A stretch of DNA of 63,402 nucleotides, counting the filler, from Octopus bimaculoides (lineage: Eukaryota), in the NCBI RefSeq assembly GCF_001194135.2. It is 6 parts of 6 records of this genome, joined end to end, with 100 filler letters (N's around TTAATTAATTAA, not from the genome) between each part and the next. Parts side by side here need not be neighbours in the genome. Positions count along the whole stretch, not along the records: positions 45,191 to 52,445 come from NC_068992.1; 5 more parts are not named here. One strand, written 5' to 3'. Under the pieces are notes generated by a model, which was given only the letters and a program-made list of their open reading frames with translations, was not told the origin of the DNA and did no database searches. Position 1 is the stretch's first letter. Every line of letters starts with the position of its first letter. Of the stretch, positions 45,191 through 52,667 are shown piece after piece. Position numbers and translations under genes: made by a program.

Positions 45191-45660
45191 AGAATCTGGC
45201 ATTCTGTAGCTGCCATAACGAAGAAACGGTGCACCAAATCCTGACAGACGTACAGTCCAGCGCTTGTCAACCAAGCAGTTTGAAGATTTGAGACGTCCAT
45301 GGGTCTTGATTTCAGATTTGTCGTGCAAAAATTCCATTCCGCAACATATGTCTTTTAAAAATGAAAATCCAAATGCCCATCCAATCTCAAAAGTTTCGTT
45401 GGCAAGTACATCCGCTATACTTCCCTTCTCAGCAATTTCCACGAACAAGCTGACGTTAGGATAAGTCAAACAGCATCCACCATATTGGATCAGATTACAA
45501 TGTCTAGTTTTCGTTAACTTGACCATGTCTGAAATAATCCTTTTATCATCAGGAGGAATTGTCCTACTATTAATCTTTTTCACATACCAGTCCTGATCGT
45601 ACCATCTATAAACTGCAACTTTTTTGCTAATAATACCTGTGTACCCCCCTGCCGTAACTA
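45191..45660 (-). other. Kinase-homology (pseudokinase) domain of receptor-GC type, incomplete
   Basis: WYVKK (VAIK lysine), RHCNLIQYGGCC, EIAEKGSIADVL, FSFLKDICCGMEFLH, HGRLKSSN (HRD replaced) and SGFG (DFG replaced). Confidence 0.85.
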
Positions 45661-48600
45661 ATCCCTCGGGTTTAGTTACTGTATCCCAGTCAATTATCCA
45701 TTGCTGAAACCTCACTCGCTTCGTCTTTCTGCCCAAAACTGTCACCAGGAAATAAGAAAAACACATCAGAAGAGTCAATCCTACACAGAGAGGTATTATG
45801 ATGCTCATAATATGAACGTCGCAAAACATTCCAATGTATAATATAGTAGTGCATTCACAAAGATTTGGTTTTTTGCATACACCAAAACGACATTTGTAGC
45901 ATATTGGTTGTTCACAAGTAACACCTTTATAGCCAGCATTACACACGCAAGTACCGTCAACCTTGCACACACCATGATTACATTGACATACAATTGTGTG
46001 ACAATACCTCCCAGCGAATCCGTCAAAGCATTCGCATTTGTTACCAGGACGACATATTCCTCGATCGAAAACATTAATATTGCCAGGGTCTTTTAATTTC
46101 TTACCACAGGCATAAAGGCAAGAATATGGTGGAACTATACTCTCTGTCCGCATATAAAGGATTGGTGGCCAATCTTCACCCTTTTTTGGCATCATTTTTT
46201 GTGTGTTGAGACCAACCATCCCTGATAAAGATATGTATCTTCGAGTGTTATGTGTCTTACCGATAGGAAATGCTACCAGTGCCGCAGTTTTATTGTGTGG
46301 AAGTATTTTCGATTCGTAAGGTATTTCTAATTGAATACCATCTTCCGATCTTTTAATACACTTTACGTAAGTTATAACTTTAGATTTCGGCAAATATGGC
46401 CAACGTGGGATTGGGTTAACTTGGGCCAGATAACCGAAATAACCAATCCTATCACCGTATGCATTTAAAGCTACTTTATCTGTTAGCCCATCTAGAGTTG
46501 TCTTACGCAAGAACCAGTTAACCTTCGCACCGCTAAATGTTAGTCGTTTATTGACAAGAATGGATAACGTTTTAGCATAAAGGTGCACGGCATCATAACC
46601 CAGTCCCATTAACGCTCCTATGTCAAAGGACCTATAACGAACTCTTCCACCTTTGTAAAGTACACGGTCTTCTTTAAAATAATAATTAAGAACTCGTTTC
46701 CAACTATCTGTTTGGTAACCTGATACATTGTAGGTCGAATCAAAGAGGTAGGTTCCAGTAAAAGCTAATGTGCATTCTAATTTTTTGTTACAAACCGAAT
46801 GGTTCTCAAATGGAAACTCGCGCGCGTATTTTTTCATTAAAACCCATTGGAATCCATGCAGAGAAGAAAGGTTCAAAAGATAGGCTTCTCGAAAGACGAT
46901 TGGCTGTATATGGAATGGGGCAAACAGAAAGATTACTTTCAGGTTACTCTTTTTCACTGGCCCCAAATCATTACTCAGCATACCATCTTGCAAATACTTG
47001 GGCTTCAAATTTTTCATTTCTTTCAGAATGATGTGATTTTGTATATTGATGTTGTATTTGATAGCCGTAGAATAGAATGAATTACTAAGTTCAATAGTCG
47101 AATATCGAATGATTACAATATCAGTCCAAAATCTTTCTTTGGCTGATTGAAACACGGAATTATAAAATTCCTCTTCAGTCCAAGTTAAACTGTTATAAAA
47201 TGGGTATGAATTTTTATCAGAGAATCCTCTGGAAGAGTCGATTGTCGAAATAAGTGGTATCATAAACTTCACTAAAAATGGACTAAAAACTTTAGCAACA
47301 TTTCCTGGAACAGAACTTATAACCAAACCAATATTACTTAAAATATTTTTTAAATCCCCAAGTTTTCTATAGGTTGCAGATTTTTCATTTGGAATATTGT
47401 ACGACTTTAATAGGAATTGTATTCCCTTTTTTTTTAACTCTGGAACAATAATACCATTGTTAACATCATTGATAGCGAATTGGATAAAAGAATTGATATG
47501 TGAGTCAATTTCTCTTCCAGCACCACTAAATCGAAGATCACCAAAATGTCCAATAGTGATGTTTCCTGTTATACGAAAAACCGGACTTGTGAAAGAAACA
47601 TGTTTCTTACCAGCGGGATATATTATTAGTTTGACGGAGTTGACCACTTCACATATAGATACTAATAAGTGGAATTTTCCTTCTGACATTACCCTGGTGT
47701 TTTCTTTTGTCAAACATATATTGGTTGGAACTGTATCAATAGATATGCGTGATTTGGAGTCAGGACCCGAAAAAATCCGACGTTCTGAGATATCCAGTGC
47801 TATCATACCCAGGCCGTTAAGTAAATGAGAACTAATAGGCACTTCTACAACATTTGTTACCTTATTTTTAAGTTCAGAATATAAACGTTTTGTTTTGCTG
47901 TCCATAATAATTTTATCTATATTTTGATGCAGTACCGAGAATTTCTTCGTGAAGACAACCGGTAGAATCTTTTCCTCTTCTTCTGATGTTAATCGTTGGA
48001 AAGTAATAAACTTTCTGTCACTGGACAACTGTCTTGCATGTTCGATGTCAAGGAAACATTCTGAACAAGCAGGAATTCTGCTCCATGGATCTCTTGCCAT
48101 GGTTAAAGTAATATTTAGTTGCAAATTTTCTGTAACGTCTAAAATTCGAATATCAGTAAATTTTGCCTTACCATCATTTGCTTGNNNNNNNNNNNNNNNN
48201 NNNNNNNNNNNNNNNNNNNNNNNNNNNNNNNNNNNNNNNNNNNNNNNNNNNNNNNNNNNNNNNNNNNNNNNNNNNNNNNNNNNNNNNNNNNNNNNNNNNN
48301 NNNNNNNNNNNNNNNNNNNNNNNNNNNNNNNNNNNNNNNNNNNNNNNNNNNNNNNNNNNNNNNNNNNNNNNNNNNNNNNNNNNNNNNNNNNNNNNNNNNN
48401 NATTACTAACCGGTGTGCAGGTTTTGTGACAGATATTGGTTTAGTGTCGATGAATATTTCATAATCTGGTATTTCGATCCTGAACAGTCGCATGGATGGA
48501 GGTACTATGGTATGTTCATGGTAAATCCAATCAAATATGAGTCTTCCATTAAAAATTTGTGATTCCATTAGAATGGAAGAATGCGGTGTATGACAACGAG

Positions 48601-48967
48601 TTTTTGCAAGATGTCTGTTATATCGCTCCGGATAATTCAACCACCATGCTGATTTCTGACACAATTTCCCGCCACTGTCTGCCCAGGTATCTTTCTTATT
48701 AATCTCACCAGATGGCAAAACAGCATAGCTGTCTATTGTAGCTGTCGTATTGAATTCTCCCTCTGCTAAAAAAGGTGTCCCGTTTGAATAATAGACAGAT
48801 ACAATAATAGGCTTGCTGATCATTTGATTGAGTGGCACTGAATAGTATAACTTTGCAGGATCATCGGGTATAATTGCAGGAGGATGGTAAAATTTTACAA
48901 ATTCTAAATGCAATTCTCCAGTCACAAACATCCAAGTGGAGATAAGAATGAGGCATGCAATTGTCAT
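45191..48967 (-). CDS. Receptor guanylyl cyclase-like / natriuretic-peptide-receptor-like single-pass membrane protein, 3'-truncated by an assembly gap
   Basis: ORF of about 1259 codons without stops, including a 217-N internal gap that keeps frame. Hydrophobic N-terminus MTIACLILISTWMFVTG with an in-frame TGA just upstream of the ATG. ANF-receptor-like segment from ITIGHFG...AINDVN, IPLIST...FSDKNSYPFY to GLTDKVALNAYGDRIG. Three EGF-like Cys repeats, TM helix IMSIIIPLCVGLTLLMCFSYFLVTVLG, then HGRLKSSNCLVDKRWTVRLSGFG, typical of the kinase-homology domain of receptor GCs. No cyclase domain is visible. Confidence 0.88.
45818..46122 (-). other. Three EGF-like repeats between the flytrap domain and the membrane
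   Basis: CLYAC...RGICRPGNKCECFDGFAGRYC; CQCNHGVCKVDGTCVCNAGYKGVTC; CYKCRFGVCKKPNLCECTTILYIGMFC. Confidence 0.85.
46418..47563 (-). other. ANF_receptor / type I periplasmic-binding (Venus flytrap) ligand-binding domain
   Basis: The motif order matches the ANF-receptor family: IG-rich first strand, AINDVN helix, IPLIS, SDK..YP, W.D.VII, D.V...A..L and G.T..V.....GDR. Confidence 0.8.
47564..48916 (-). other. Three tandem Ig/Big-like beta-sandwich repeats at the N-terminus of the receptor
   Basis: Each unit has a G-x-x-x-F-like motif (FNGRLIF, NDGKAKF, SEGKFHL) and ends in T/S-x-x-F/I-x-V/I (DTKPISVT, FTKKFSVL, TSPVFRIT). The distance from unit start to the Gly is about 85 aa in unit 2 (using the gap length) and 83 aa in unit 3. 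The fold assignment is an inference. Confidence 0.5.
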
Positions 48968-49076
48968 AGTTCATCGGATATTTCATGAAGAAAATGCGTT
49001 TGAATAATCATTTGTCGTTTGAAAGCATTGCACTTTTTCGATTTGAATATGAGAAACTAAATGCTAACCAGAGCGC

Positions 49077-49112
49077 CTGTGCAATTAAACAAAGAAATCT
49101 AATAAAAAAAAA
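49077..49112 (-). promoter_or_regulatory. Candidate splice acceptor 109 nt upstream of the receptor ATG
   Basis: The minus strand reads ttttttttattagatttctttgtttaattgcacag|gcgct, a T-rich tract ending in CAG|G. This implies an upstream non-coding exon. Confidence 0.4.
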
Positions 49113-49413
49113 TCTATCAACGTCTTTCTAAAACGCAACTTCATATGTTATACACTGACTTTTGATCTGATAATAAGCGTTTTTTTTTATTTTCTTTTTT
49201 TCATAATTTGAATTCCATATAAGATTGTTTCAGAGTAGCGTCTCTGATAAAAGAAAAATTTAAGAAAGCATCTTCGTGAATATGTATCACATCTGCATGC
49301 ACAAAATAGATGCACACACGCGCATGCTTTTGTGTATGTGTGTGTGTATTTGTGTGTGAGTGTGTGTCTGTGTGAATGTCTGTGTGTGTTCTCGCTATCT
49401 ATCTGTCTATCTG

Positions 49414-49453
<40 letters not shown>

Positions 49454-49866
49454 GCTATCTATCTCTCTCTCTCTCTCTCTTCGTATATATATNNNNNNNN
49501 NNNNNNNNNNNNNNNNNNNNNNNNNNNNNNNNNNNNNNNNNNNNNNNNNNNNNNNNNNNNNNNNNNNNNNNNNNNNNNNNNNNNNNNNNNNNNNNNNNNN
49601 NNNNNNNNNNNNNNNNNNNNNNNNNNNNNNNNNNNNNNNNNNNNNNNNNNNNNNNNNNNNNNNNNNNNNNNNNNNNNNNNNNNNNNNNNNNNNNNNNNNN
49701 NNNNNNNNNNNNNNNNNNNNNNNNNNNNNNNNNNNNNNNNNNNNNNNNNNNNNNNNNNNNNNNNNNNNNNNNNNNNNNNNNNNNNNNNNNNNNNNNNNNN
49801 NNNNNNNNNNNNNNNNNNNNNNNNNNNNNNNNNNNNNNNNNNNNNNNNNNNNNNNNNNNNNNNNNN

Positions 49867-50172
49867 CGTGCAAGTGGCTGAGCACTCCACAGACACGTTT
49901 ACCCTTAACGTAGTTCTCGGGGATATTCAGCGTGACACAGTGTGACAGGGCTGACCTTTTGAATTACAGGCACAACAGAAACAGGAAGAAAGAGTGAGAG
50001 AAAGTTGTGGTGAAAGAGTACAGCAGGGTTCGCCACCATCCCCTGCCGGTGCCTCGTGGAACGTTTAGGTGTTTTCGCTCAATAAACACTCACAAGGCCC
50101 TGTCTGGGAATCGAAACCGCGATCCTATGACCGCGAGTCCGCTGCCCTAACCACTGGGCCATTGCGCCTCCA
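49867..50172 (-). mobile_element. Young tRNA-derived SINE (31887 family), 3' end lost in a gap
   Basis: Near-identical reverse complement of the first 300 nt of the 50790 and 31887 copies. Confidence 0.9.
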
Positions 50173-50387
50173 GAAAGCATCCTAAAGATTATAGAAAACA
50201 GCAAATAGCTAGACAGTGAGACACAGAGAATCTGCGAACGCTCAGCTACGCAACTGGAGTGAAAAAGGGAGAGAAAGAAAGGAAAGCTGTCCCTGGGTCA
50301 GGTGTCAGCAGCAGGCAGGGGAAAAAGAGGGTTAGAAAGAGAGAGAGCGACAGAGAGAAAACAGGGGACGGAATATACACACACACT

Positions 50388-50428
<41 letters not shown>

Positions 50429-50789
50429 GCGCACACATACGCACACTCGAGCGCGCATGTACACACACAACTATATTTTTTCGTGGTCAAGCACCACATA
50501 GATCTAGTTAAATTCATTCACAGAATTTGCATTTTTTAAAAGGAAGTAAAAATCTGAAATTCGGTTATAATGAAGCAGTTTTCCACTCTTATTCCTGTGA
50601 AGTGGAAAAAAAATTGACGAAAACGTTACAGACGTTTAAAAATGGGGAAAAAATGTGTTTTTAGCGAATAGTGAGACAAAAATTTTCTGCATTGTAGTGG
50701 TGTCAACTTAGCGGTGTCAACTTTAAAATTGTCCCCTGTGAAAATTATAGTTTAGCGTCTGTGAAATGACATGTTACCTAATAATGTAT

Positions 50790-51180
50790 GTGGAGGCGCA
50801 ATGGCCCGGTGGTTAGGGCAGCGGACTCGCGGTCATAGGATCGCGGTTTCGATTCCCAGACCGGGCGTTGTGAGTATTTACTGAGCGAAAACACCTAAAG
50901 CTCCACGAGGCTCCGGCAGGGGATGGTGGCGAACCCTGCTGTACTCTTCCTCCACAACTTTCTCTCACTCTTACTTCCTGTTTCTGTTGTGCCTGTAATT
51001 CAAAGGGCCAGCCTTGTCACACTGTGTCACGCTGAATATCCCCGAGAACTACGTTAAGGGTACACGTGTCTGTGGAGTGCTCAGCCACTTGCACGTTAAA
51101 TTCACAAGCAGGCTGTTCCGTTGATCGTATCAACTGGAACCCTCGACGTCGTAAGTGACGGAGTGCCAACACCAACAACA
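50790..51180 (+). mobile_element. Young full-length tRNA-derived SINE (31887 family)
   Basis: A and B boxes, CAA tail, near-TSD acctaataatgt / acctaatattgt. Confidence 0.9.
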
Positions 51181-52667
51181 ACCTAATATTGTCAGCATGT
51201 ATCATCTTTCTGTTTCTTTGCCCCTTCATTGATTTCTATAATGTTTTGTATGTTTTTATTATTTTTAAATTTGTTATATTAATATATTTGTATGCATGTG
51301 TTTACGTTATGCGTTTTAAGAATTATGCATACTTTTCATGTGCATGTGATGTGTACTGTGGTACACGCAGCCAATTATATGCTAATATAATGTTTAACCA
51401 TAAGACTACAAGCTGACAGAATCATTAGCACACTGGGCAAATGCTTTACATTCTGAGTTCAAATTCCACCTAAGTTGACTTTGCTTTTCGTCCTTGGAGG
51501 GTGGATAAAATAAGTACCATTTGAATGTGTTACCAGTCCAGTTGACCATACAATTGGAATGAACATCTTAGAAACAGATGAAGATACATTTCCGTTAATT
51601 TTTGTTTACTAATGCACATCAACAAATGAGCCAATGAGGTAATCTCTGTGTGGTTGTTCAATTTGCTAGAAATAACAGCCAAATCTCCCTTAGACTATGC
51701 TCTAACATTTTAAAGATGAAAGACATTAAATAACGTTGCCCTATATCTTCAATAAAAAATACAGAATGGCTGAAAAACACAAAAAATGTAAACACAGAAA
51801 AATTTCACGAAATATATGTAAAATACATATGAAAAATATATGAAAATATGTAAAATATTAAGACAATTGACGAAAAATATCTACAATAAAATTCGAATTG
51901 ATAAATATAATTTTTTATTAAAACAAACCACGGGGGCGAAGTGATTCTCGTGGTGTGAAGAATCAACTCAACACAACGTGTGGGTGAAGTGAAGCACAAC
52001 ACAACTTGCGGTTATCATGGTAACAAGCTTTTAGTGCCTCACTGTCTGTTGATTGGCTAAAATTACCCGAATTTCCCCAATTTTAATTCCAAATAACATC
52101 AGATTCTTTAATTTACGAGATAAAGTAATTAGTTGAGCGAAATCAAAATTCAGAACTGCATCGATGCACCAAAATTGAGAAAAAAAAAATAGTTACAAGT
52201 GAAAAGTGAATAAAAAAAGTTTTCAATAAAACATCAAATACAAACACATTTCTTTTTATTGAAACAAATTTTCTGTTATACATGTAAGTATGGAAAGCTG
52301 AAGAAATACTGCATATGTTGAATTAAGACTAACAGTTTCATGAGGAATTTTCAAAATTAAAAACACAATTTTAAAAAAATCAGATGAGATCTAGTAGAAT
52401 GGTGGAATTGATTCCAAATGTTATTTATTTCAAGTTCATTTTGTANNNNNNNNNNNNNNNNNNNNNNNNNNNNNNNNNNNNNNNNNNNNTTAATTAATTA
52501 ANNNNNNNNNNNNNNNNNNNNNNNNNNNNNNNNNNNNNNNNNNNNATATACATATATATATATGTATATGTATGTATGTATCTATATATCTATATATAAA
52601 TATATCTATATATCTATGTATCTCTTTTACTTATTTTACTTATTTCAGTCATTTGACTGCGGCCATA

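What the first reader, a model, noticed from the sequence alone, without database searches (positions are those of the whole stretch)
45191..48967. Orphan receptor with an unusual architecture: 3 beta-sandwich repeats + Venus flytrap + 3 EGF + TM + GC-type pseudokinase
Seen: the domain order in one ORF. Established: natriuretic-peptide-type receptor GCs normally have just a flytrap ectodomain joined by a short linker to the TM helix. Here about 450 aa of tandem repeats precede the flytrap, and an EGF stalk sits where class C GPCRs have their cysteine-rich domain. Inference: a lineage-specific receptor that could combine adhesion or matrix binding with small-ligand sensing, possibly sensory. 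This is the strongest candidate for an undescribed system in the window.
Basis: partly seen in the sequence, partly recalled or inferred. Interest (0 to 1): 0.8.

Follow-up and report, generated by a model that had tools for sequence, protein, structure and literature searches.

The report
Octopus receptor guanylyl cyclase, extended ectodomain
This is a real, intron-free Octopus bimaculoides gene for a cGMP-making cell-surface receptor that has three extra Ig-like domains in front of its ligand-binding flytrap and three EGF modules behind it. The layout is unstudied, but it is not octopus-specific: it also occurs in bivalves, probably a gastropod (only the front module was seen there), a centipede and another animal.

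Summary

Three corrections:
- **Assembly gaps.** The ORF is cut by gaps, not by biology. Gapless relatives carry one uninterrupted 1681-codon ORF. They have 85-86 codons where the window has 217 N. The ORF's end at 45191 is a second gap, and the cyclase C-terminus with its stop codon lies beyond it. This is a full receptor guanylyl cyclase, not a pseudokinase-only receptor.
- **Not repeats.** The roughly 480-aa N-terminal module is three different Ig-like beta-sandwich domains plus a small Cys-containing sub-domain (AF2 pLDDT 91). It has no Pfam or PDB sequence match, and the segments show no detectable similarity to each other.
- **Not lineage-specific.** Collinear homologues occur in bivalves, a centipede and an unidentified metazoan; from a gastropod only the front module was recovered. 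These are multi-exon where that could be checked. The copies in octopods and in one unidentified, probably cephalopod, source are intronless. In octopods they sit in clusters, with mosaic dS (gene conversion), conserved signalling domains and fast-evolving D3 and EGF segments.

No paper describing the architecture was found.

Verdict: an uncharacterised variant of a known receptor class.

The parts
48917..48967 (-). Start codon and signal peptide (MTIACLILISTWMFVTG)
   Evidence: First ATG of the ORF. Hydrophobic segment aa 1-21. The same N-terminus is found in the O. bimaculoides paralogue P0002, in O. sinensis and in O. vulgaris.
48402..48916 (-). N-terminal beta-sandwich domain D1 (aa 18-~174) and the first residues of D2, up to the gap edge
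   Evidence: No Pfam match. Aligns to residues 14-180 of the AF2 model of P0006 (pLDDT 91), an all-beta domain with two short helices. Conserved SPP..P.DP..YSVPLNQ and GG.LCQ motifs across molluscs and Strigamia.
48185..48401 (.). Assembly gap (217 N) hiding most of Ig-like domain D2
   Evidence: Gapless relatives have 85-86 codons here, in frame (QPP..V.ANHDF.VEVEIRD...GLDS...). This stretch of the profile also matches multi-repeat Ig-like bacterial proteins.
48101..48184 (-). Last strands of D2 (QANDGKAKFTDIRILDVTENLQLNITLT)
   Evidence: Maps to P0006 model residues 268-295. Contains the family's near-invariant G, F, I and T columns.
47942..48100 (-). Small Cys-containing sub-domain or linker (MARDPWSRIPACSEC...)
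   Evidence: Maps to model residues 296-345. Low confidence in the shallow model, but pLDDT 84-88 with two helices and short strands in the deeper one.
47570..47941 (-). Ig-like beta-sandwich domain D3 (...RRIFSGPDS...SICEVVNSVKL...)
   Evidence: Maps to model residues 346-469. Conserved in the Sinanodonta and Strigamia proteins. With the preceding linker it evolves fast (dN/dS about 0.95 against the O. vulgaris copy).
46385..47569 (-). Venus-flytrap (ANF_receptor / periplasmic-binding-protein-like) domain
   Evidence: Pfam PF01094, E 6e-16, aa 262-580 = 46445-47401. The single sequence has no PDB hit. The family profile hits GABA-B2, T1R, mGluR, the NMDA N-terminal domain and, weakly, NPR-C.
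46121..46384 (-). Conserved post-flytrap segment (about 88 aa) preceding the EGF stalk
   Evidence: Conserved across the family. dN/dS 0.28-0.31. No Pfam match.
45821..46120 (-). Three EGF-like modules, 6 Cys each (Cys at aa 689-728, 733-757, 762-788)
   Evidence: Sub-threshold Pfam EGF_TEN, EGF_2, JAG1-like_EGF2 and EGF_Teneurin matches at aa 706-790. Cys spacing shown. Present in every family member, including bivalve and centipede.
45731..45814 (-). Single transmembrane helix followed by RKTKRVR
   Evidence: Kyte-Doolittle maximum 2.35 over aa 778-819; basic residues on the C-terminal side.
45191..45730 (-). Juxtamembrane segment and N-terminal two-thirds of the kinase-homology (pseudokinase) domain, cut by the assembly gap at the piece edge
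   Evidence: Pfam PK_Tyr_Ser-Thr 4.7e-15; NPR1 KHD 4e-18; HGRLKSSNC and SGFG replace HRD and DFG. 1024 N follow in the genome record. Strong purifying selection (dN/dS 0.16-0.27).

Best explanation
The window holds most of a single-exon Octopus bimaculoides gene (chromosome CM046612.1, about 12.109-12.115 Mb, minus strand) for a complete type I receptor guanylyl cyclase of about 1680 aa.

Domain order: signal peptide, three non-identical Ig-like beta-sandwich domains with a small Cys-containing insert, a divergent Venus-flytrap (ANF_receptor) domain, a conserved about 90-aa segment, three EGF-like modules, a TM helix, a kinase-homology pseudokinase, a dimerisation helix, and a class III cyclase domain.

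Likely mechanism (inferred from the family): the receptor acts as a dimer. An extracellular ligand engages the flytrap, possibly helped or gated by the Ig-like module. The rigid EGF stalk and TM helix pass the change to the KHD and coiled coil. The paired cyclase domains then convert GTP to cGMP.

The gene belongs to an old, uncharacterised receptor-GC subfamily present in molluscs and at least one myriapod. In the cephalopod copies examined it has no introns, which suggests a retrocopy. In octopods it has been duplicated in clusters, with gene conversion between copies.
For: Shown by tools:
- Domain calls in the window.
- Locus identity and flanking assembly gaps.
- The cyclase C-terminus (…[15 protein letters not shown]…HKFK*) lies just beyond the 1024-N gap in the same orientation.
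- Uninterrupted 1681-codon ORFs in O. sinensis and O. vulgaris; 1619-1700-codon single ORFs in Argonauta and on two ENA contigs.
- The orthologue's dimerisation helix and cyclase domain align to human NPR1 over 242 residues (E 1e-75). FSDIV, KVE.I.D.YMVVSG and R.[13 protein letters not shown] are all conserved.
- dN/dS is 0.16-0.22 in the KHD and cyclase domain and 0.36 in the flytrap.
- AF2 model of the N-terminal module: pLDDT 91, pTM 0.82, all-beta domains. Foldseek matches only generic tandem Ig-like or macroglobulin-domain arrays.
- Family members with the same collinear ectodomain plus KHD in Sinanodonta and Strigamia. They score higher against the octopus KHD than insect Gyc76C-like proteins do (169 vs 103-107 bits).
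- Multi-exon homologues: the Sinanodonta gene spans 185 kb, and the unidentified metazoan locus L008 has collinear exons.
- At least three copies within about 28 kb in O. bimaculoides, and at least two copies within one 25-41 kb locus in O. vulgaris and Argonauta.
- dS varies from 0.03 to 1.2 along the gene. The Argonauta pair is 98-100% identical over the first 900 codons only.
Against:
- In the window itself, D2, the C-lobe of the KHD, the coiled coil and most of the cyclase domain are hidden in gaps. Intactness there is inferred from relatives.
- With tandem paralogues nearby, the scaffold could join pieces of different copies.
- Overall dN/dS of about 0.45-0.5 is high for a signalling receptor, and D3 and EGF are near 1.
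- Ligand, dimerisation and activity are all inferred.
- The KHD lacks the DFG Asp that NPR1 keeps, so its regulation may differ from NPR-type receptors.
Confidence: 0.8

Rival explanations
1. Decaying retrocopy: an intronless processed copy of a multi-exon receptor-GC gene that is no longer functional in O. bimaculoides.
For: Intronless structure, whereas bivalve and other metazoan homologues are multi-exon. dN/dS is about 0.5 overall and about 1 in D3 and EGF. One O. vulgaris neighbour copy has in-frame stops or a frame shift near codon 1448. No expression data.
Against: 1186 + 119 visible codons contain no stop. Every intronless copy examined in octopods and on the ENA contigs, apart from O. 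vulgaris copy A, keeps a full ORF. The KHD and cyclase domain are under strong constraint (0.16-0.22). Catalytic motifs are intact.
Confidence: 0.08
2. Scaffolding chimera: the pieces on either side of the N gaps come from different tandem paralogues, so the 'gene' as laid out does not exist as one molecule.
For: Three gaps fall inside or at the edges of the gene. Near-identical paralogues lie within 28 kb. The UniProt model of the neighbouring copy is also patchy.
Against: Order, orientation and frame of all three pieces match the gapless orthologues exactly. Their identities to O. vulgaris copy B are homogeneous (84%, 84%, 88%).
Confidence: 0.07
3. Cyclase-independent adhesion or scaffold receptor: the ectodomain (Ig-like + EGF) mediates cell-cell or matrix contact, with the pseudokinase as the signalling end.
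For: Ig-like and EGF modules are typical of adhesion proteins. Foldseek matches include adhesins and Ig-superfamily cell-adhesion molecules. The ORF in the window stops inside the KHD.
Against: The stop is an assembly gap. A conserved cyclase C-terminus follows. The cyclase is the most conserved part of the family (71% identity to P0006 against 39% for the N-terminal module).
Confidence: 0.05

Closest known systems
Natriuretic-peptide receptor guanylyl cyclases (NPR1/GC-A, NPR2/GC-B)
   Same: Type I topology. ANF_receptor-family ectodomain. A KHD with HG.LKS.NC. Dimerisation helix and cyclase domain that align over 242 residues at E 1e-75 with all catalytic motifs.
   Different: About 480 aa of Ig-like domains precede the flytrap, and three EGF modules plus a roughly 90-aa segment sit between the flytrap and the TM helix. 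The flytrap is so divergent that NPR-C is only a marginal profile hit (E 0.005). The DFG Asp is replaced by Gly. The ligand is unknown.
Sea-urchin speract receptor and insect Gyc76C (sources of the automatic names 'speract receptor-like' and 'Gyc76C-like')
   Same: Invertebrate receptor GCs. Gyc76C-like proteins are the nearest named non-family hits, at 35-38% identity over the intracellular half.
   Different: The Gyc76C-like proteins have no N-terminal module and no EGF modules in their Pfam annotation. Their ectodomains give no or negligible similarity. The speract receptor itself was not compared here; the 'speract receptor-like' label is an automatic annotation.
Class C GPCRs (mGluR, CaSR, T1R, GABA-B)
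   Same: A flytrap followed by a disulfide-rich rigid stalk before the membrane. The flytrap profile's best solved-structure matches are GABA-B2, T1R3, T1R2a and mGluRs (E 2e-6 to 1e-3).
   Different: One TM helix and a cyclase output instead of 7TM. The stalk is made of EGF modules, not the class C cysteine-rich domain. The similarities are weak and give no phylogenetic placement.
Uncharacterised database entries of the same family (Strigamia T1JDE2; Sinanodonta KAL3862181; Argonauta GAB1605771; O. bimaculoides A0A0L8GP16; O. sinensis LOC118765611)
   Same: The same collinear domain order, or for the truncated O. bimaculoides and O. sinensis models as much of it as the model covers.
   Different: None is functionally studied. 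Several gene models are truncated or fused. The non-cephalopod genes have introns.

Membership tests
Receptor (membrane) guanylyl cyclase | Extracellular ANF_receptor / periplasmic-binding-protein-like ligand-binding domain | tested here: met
   Pfam PF01094, E 6e-16, score 58.8 against a cut-off of 25.4.
Receptor (membrane) guanylyl cyclase | Single TM helix, type I topology with signal peptide | tested here: met
   Only hydropathy was used: an N-terminal hydrophobic segment and one TM helix followed by basic residues.
Receptor (membrane) guanylyl cyclase | Kinase-homology domain lacking the catalytic HRD Asp | tested here: met
   HGRLKSSNC aligned to NPR1 HGNLKSSNC. SGFG also replaces the DFG/DYG motif.
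Receptor (membrane) guanylyl cyclase | Dimerisation helix plus class III cyclase domain with metal-binding Asp x2, GTP-specifying Glu and Cys, and Asn and Arg | tested here: inconclusive
   In this gene only the last 119 codons are readable. They lie beyond a 1024-N gap, outside the window piece, and carry the Cys, Asn and Arg of [15 protein letters not shown]. The rest is hidden. All motifs are present in the O. sinensis orthologue, aligned to NPR1.
Receptor (membrane) guanylyl cyclase | cGMP synthesis on ligand binding | not testable with these tools
   Requires expression and an enzyme assay.
Natriuretic-peptide-receptor subfamily | Flytrap ectodomain joined to the TM helix by a short juxtamembrane hinge, with nothing N-terminal to the flytrap | tested here: not met
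   About 480 aa of Ig-like domains lie before the flytrap, and about 190 aa (conserved segment plus three EGF modules) lie after it.
Natriuretic-peptide-receptor subfamily | Flytrap closest to NPR ectodomains | tested here: not met
   The family profile hits class C GPCR flytraps at E 2e-6 to 1e-3 and NPR-C only at E 0.005. The single sequence gives no hit.
Class C GPCR | Seven-transmembrane domain after the flytrap and cysteine-rich domain | tested here: not met
   One TM helix, then KHD and cyclase.
   hhalign between D1, D2 and D3 profiles gives probability 9% or less and E 0.004-0.5. All three are nevertheless beta-sandwich-like in the AF2 model.

The most novel reading that the evidence does not exclude
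The Ig-like x3 + flytrap + EGF x3 receptor GCs are a previously unrecognised, ancient protostome receptor class. Its N-terminal module confers recognition of protein, cell-surface or matrix ligands. In cephalopods the gene was retroposed, tandemly amplified and diversified (fast-evolving D3 and EGF, gene conversion elsewhere) into a small sensory or gamete-recognition receptor repertoire, comparable in logic to nematode gcy genes or the octopus chemotactile receptors.
Probability: 0.25. Interest if true: 0.75.

Novelty: new variant of a known kind. Interest (0 to 1): 0.55.

Why it matters
Receptor guanylyl cyclases are textbook 'flytrap-TM-KHD-cyclase' proteins. Most invertebrate members are orphans.

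This subfamily adds a roughly 480-aa Ig-like module that no domain database describes, and an EGF stalk. It is conserved from molluscs to a centipede. That would extend the known ectodomain repertoire of the class and point to a different type of ligand, or to co-receptor or adhesion logic.

The cephalopod-specific features are intron loss, clustered copies (head-to-tail in some pairs), gene conversion, and rapid change confined to two ectodomain segments. These are the pattern often seen in sensory or reproductive receptor families, so they give a concrete candidate set for cGMP-based sensing in octopus.

The finding also flags mis-built gene models (truncated or fused) in four public cephalopod annotations.

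Tried and rejected
- **RNA-seq and read support.** There is no expression or gap-spanning evidence.
- **First AF2 model.** With a 6-sequence alignment it was poor (pLDDT 57.7), and its Foldseek result was only generic. It was replaced by a 17-sequence run.
- **Second word-indexed homologue search.** Run with a diverse N-terminal-module profile, it returned only two Strigamia proteins. Distribution therefore rests mainly on the exhaustive HMMER search.
- **N-terminal module against Pfam** at E up to 5, and the module profile against PDB sequences at E up to 1: nothing.
- **Internal-repeat hypothesis.** Rejected by hhalign.
- **Single-sequence flytrap against PDB.** No hit. Only the profile gave weak hits.
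- **Literature.** Eight searches and three papers inspected found no description of a receptor GC with Ig-like or EGF ectodomain modules, nor of these octopus genes. The library excludes most subscription journals, so absence is not proof.
- **Rfam and tRNA scans of the piece.** Nothing.
- **Source organism of locus L008.** An adjacent RPS6-like ORF only says 'metazoan'.
Full report
**What is in the window**

The usable piece (45191-52445) is Octopus bimaculoides chromosome CM046612.1, about 12.10-12.12 Mb, from assembly GCA_001194135.2. On the minus strand an ORF starts at the ATG at 48967. It runs 188 codons plus 2 nt to an N run at 48185-48401, then resumes for 998 codons with no stop, down to the piece edge at 45191.

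Features of the ORF:
- The first 17-21 residues are hydrophobic, consistent with a signal peptide.
- Pfam finds nothing in the first 188 aa.
- In the 998-aa part Pfam finds ANF_receptor (aa 262-580, E 6e-16), sub-threshold EGF models over aa 706-790, and the protein-kinase fold over aa 859-984.
- Eighteen cysteines between aa 689 and 788 fall into three 6-Cys EGF-like modules.
- One strong hydrophobic helix (aa 792-818) is followed by RKTKRVR.
- The kinase-like part is closest to the kinase-homology domain of human NPR1 (E 4e-18). It reads HGRLKSSNC where kinases have HRD, and SGFG where they have DFG.

**The gap, tested first**

As written, 566 nt + 217 N = 783 = 3 x 261, so the frame is preserved. 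The gap length is only an estimate, so this alone means little.

The better test is comparison with gapless relatives:
- O. sinensis (L004 8801-13846) and O. vulgaris (L007 25742-30787) each carry one uninterrupted 1681-codon ORF.
- Both window pieces align to these ORFs collinearly and in one frame.
- 85-86 codons lie between the two window pieces in those ORFs.
- The two Argonauta hians genes and two genes on ENA contigs are likewise single ORFs of 1619-1700 codons.

The flanks are therefore very probably continuous. The gap hides about 255-258 nt, which encode most of the second N-terminal domain.

**The ORF's end is also an artefact**

Position 45191 is followed in the genome record by 1024 N. 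Immediately beyond this gap, on the same strand, lie 119 codons that are 85-88% identical to the C-terminus of the orthologues' cyclase domain (…[38 protein letters not shown]…HKFK), ending in a stop codon. The orthologues have 293 codons in place of that gap.

The protein is a complete receptor guanylyl cyclase, not a receptor ending in a pseudokinase. The orthologue's dimerisation helix and cyclase domain align to NPR1 over 242 residues (E 1e-75). The conserved motifs are:
- FSDIV, which carries the first metal-binding Asp;
- KVESISDSYMVVSG, which carries the GTP-specifying Glu and the second Asp;
- [16 protein letters not shown], which carries the specifying Cys and the Asn and Arg.

Assigning roles to these residues rests on established knowledge of class III cyclases.

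**The N-terminal module**

It spans about 480 aa in complete relatives. It has no Pfam match even at E 5, and its profile has no PDB sequence match.

AlphaFold2 results:
- A 6-sequence alignment gave a poor model (pLDDT 57.7).
- A 17-sequence alignment of diverse family members gave pLDDT 91.1 and pTM 0.82.

The confident model has these parts, in P0006 numbering:
- a roughly 155-aa beta domain, D1 (residues 14-168);
- a roughly 115-aa Ig-like domain, D2 (180-295);
- a small helix/strand sub-domain containing the conserved C..C pair (300-345);
- a third Ig-like domain, D3 (346-455).

Foldseek against the PDB returns only generic tandem Ig-like or macroglobulin-domain arrays, all at low TM-score: alpha-2-macroglobulins, complement C4/C5, bacterial adhesins and S-layer proteins, filamin, nectin-like 5.

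Profile-profile comparison of D1, D2 and D3 finds no significant similarity between them. 'Three beta-sandwich domains' is right; 'tandem repeats' is not. The start of D2 (QPP..V.AN..F.V.V.I.D…G.DS) also matches many-fold repeated units in giant bacterial proteins, such as a Bdellovibrionales protein with 14 stretches. This places D2 in a broad, poorly catalogued Ig-like class.

Mapped to the window:
- D1 is about 48446-48910.
- D2 runs from about 48410 through the gap to 48101.
- The insert is 47942-48100.
- D3 is 47570-47941.

**The flytrap**

The single sequence has no PDB hit. A family profile gives weak hits, in this order: GABA-B2 (2e-6), T1R3 and T1R2a, mGluRs, the NMDA-receptor N-terminal domain, and NPR-C only at 0.005. 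The domain is a divergent member of the ANF_receptor superfamily. By sequence it is not specifically NPR-like.

**Distribution**

An exhaustive HMMER search of 1.84 billion representative proteins with the N-terminal-module profile gave 208 hits at E of 0.001 or better. Apart from the bacterial Ig-repeat proteins, the named eukaryotic hits are:
- cephalopods;
- the bivalves Sinanodonta woodiana (N-terminal module + ANF + EGF + KHD; partial) and Tegillarca granosa;
- the gastropod Gigantopelta aegis;
- the centipede Strigamia maritima (T1JDE2: N-terminal module + ANF + EGF + KHD + cyclase, 1836 aa; also T1IH60 and T1IKU7).

Segment-by-segment BLAST shows that the bivalve and centipede proteins match the octopus protein in the N-terminal module, the flytrap, the linker plus EGF, and the KHD. 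Their KHD scores are higher than those of insect Gyc76C-like proteins (169 vs 103-107 bits).

An unidentified metazoan (ENA ERZ18545498, L008) has collinear exons for D1-D2, D3, EGF, KHD and cyclase spread over about 10.5 kb. The Sinanodonta gene spans 185 kb.

The architecture is therefore old, at least molluscs plus a myriapod, and is not cephalopod-specific. NCBI and UniProt label the members automatically as 'speract receptor-like', 'atrial natriuretic peptide receptor 1-like', 'guanylate cyclase' or 'uncharacterized'. I found no paper describing this architecture or these genes. The library is incomplete, so this is not proof of absence.

**Features specific to the cephalopod copies**

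*No introns.* Every copy examined in octopods, and on the ENA contigs of unidentified (probably cephalopod) origin, is a single ORF. This contrasts with the multi-exon relatives. An origin by retroposition is an inference.

*Clustered copies.*
- O. bimaculoides has at least three copies within about 28 kb: the window gene; the A0A0L8GP16 copy about 8 kb upstream in the same orientation; and a third copy ('speract receptor-like', P0171), which sits head-to-head with the second.
- O. vulgaris has two copies within 25 kb, whose RefSeq models are fused.
- Argonauta has a head-to-tail pair plus a distant paralogue.

*Selection.* Against O. vulgaris copy B, dN/dS by region is:

| Region | dN/dS |
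|---|---|
| KHD | 0.16 |
| Cyclase tail | 0.22 |
| Post-flytrap segment | 0.28 |
| Flytrap | 0.36 |
| D1 | 0.53 |
| Linker + D3 | 0.95 |
| EGF (96 codons only) | 1.24 |

These values are; one search gives similar values against O. sinensis.

*Gene conversion.* dS itself ranges from 0.03 to 1.2 along the gene between copies. The Argonauta pair is 98-100% identical over the first 900 codons and 79-93% identical afterwards. This is a gene-conversion mosaic, and it also makes strict orthology assignments unsafe.

**Mechanism (inferred)**

By analogy with solved receptor GCs, the receptor works as a dimer. Ligand binding to the ectodomain reorients the EGF stalk and TM helices. The pseudokinase and coiled coil relay this change. 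The paired cyclase domains then make cGMP.

What the Ig-like module adds is unknown. The high pTM suggests that it packs rigidly rather than dangling. Possible roles are ligand capture, a co-receptor or adhesion contact, or autoinhibition of the flytrap.

The pattern of constraint is conserved signalling parts with two fast ectodomain segments and a tandem family. It fits a receptor facing variable ligands, whether sensory, reproductive or immune. That remains a hypothesis.

**Rivals**

- A dead retrocopy is unlikely, given the long intact ORFs across species and the strong constraint on the KHD and cyclase domain.
- A scaffolding chimera of neighbouring paralogues cannot be excluded without reads. 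It is disfavoured by the homogeneous 84-88% identity of all three pieces to one O. vulgaris copy.
- A cyclase-less adhesion receptor is refuted by the downstream cyclase fragment.

**Surroundings**

The 3.5 kb upstream of the ATG holds:
- (TG)n, (CTAT)n and (AC)n microsatellites;
- a 374-N gap;
- an inverted pair of a roughly 306-nt element with a tRNA-like end, other copies of which lie in neighbouring loci.

No Rfam family or tRNA gene was found.

**Verdict**

The interpretation needs three corrections: this is a full cyclase, the N-terminal domains are not repeats, and the layout is not lineage-specific. The gene belongs to an uncharacterised, widely distributed variant of a well-known receptor class, with an interesting cephalopod-specific genomic history.

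Noticed in passing
window 49867-50172 and 50791-51095: Inverted pair (95% complementary, 618 nt apart) of a roughly 306-nt dispersed element. One end looks tRNA-derived (SINE-like). Further copies at 89-95% identity lie in L001 and L006, with weaker ones in O. sinensis and O. vulgaris. The left arm abuts the 374-N gap.
   Followed up: partly
window 49329-49480 and 50377-50469: Microsatellites (TG)n, (CTAT)n and (AC)n in the intergenic region upstream of the gene. They account for several spurious low-complexity ORFs in the ORF list.
   Followed up: no
L002 1365-6224 vs 10001-14869 (Argonauta hians): The tandem pair is 98-100% identical at nucleotide level over the first roughly 900 codons (N-terminal module and flytrap), then only 79-93% identical from the EGF stalk onward. 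There is a sharp gene-conversion boundary near the end of the flytrap.
   Followed up: partly
L007 5632-10675 (O. vulgaris copy A) and RefSeq models P0169, P0170: Copy A shows two in-frame stops near codon 1448 and an HSP frame shift at about 9962-10014. This is either a pseudogene or an assembly error. The NCBI 'speract receptor-like' models of 2241 and 1866 aa fuse parts of neighbouring copies, with a cyclase domain preceding a flytrap.
   Followed up: partly
L001 1002-1307; L006 2-4429 and 8199-13162 (O. bimaculoides): Two further family copies lie within about 28 kb of the window gene, both interrupted by assembly gaps. UniProt A0A0L8GP16 (1235 aa) skips D2 and most of the KHD and cyclase domain because of them. 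Argonauta RefSeq models start at an internal Met although the ORF and signal peptide extend upstream.
   Followed up: partly
L008 7054-9393 (ENA ERZ18545498, unidentified metazoan): Next to the multi-exon homologue lie an intronless RPS6-like ORF lacking its first roughly 49 residues (probably a processed pseudogene) and a Tc5-type transposase ORF.
   Followed up: no
window 45191-45610 (KHD) and all family members: The DFG-equivalent motif is GFG (SGFG, TGFG) throughout the family, including bivalve and centipede, whereas NPR1 keeps an Asp (TDYG). The pseudokinase may not bind Mg-ATP in the canonical way.
   Followed up: partly
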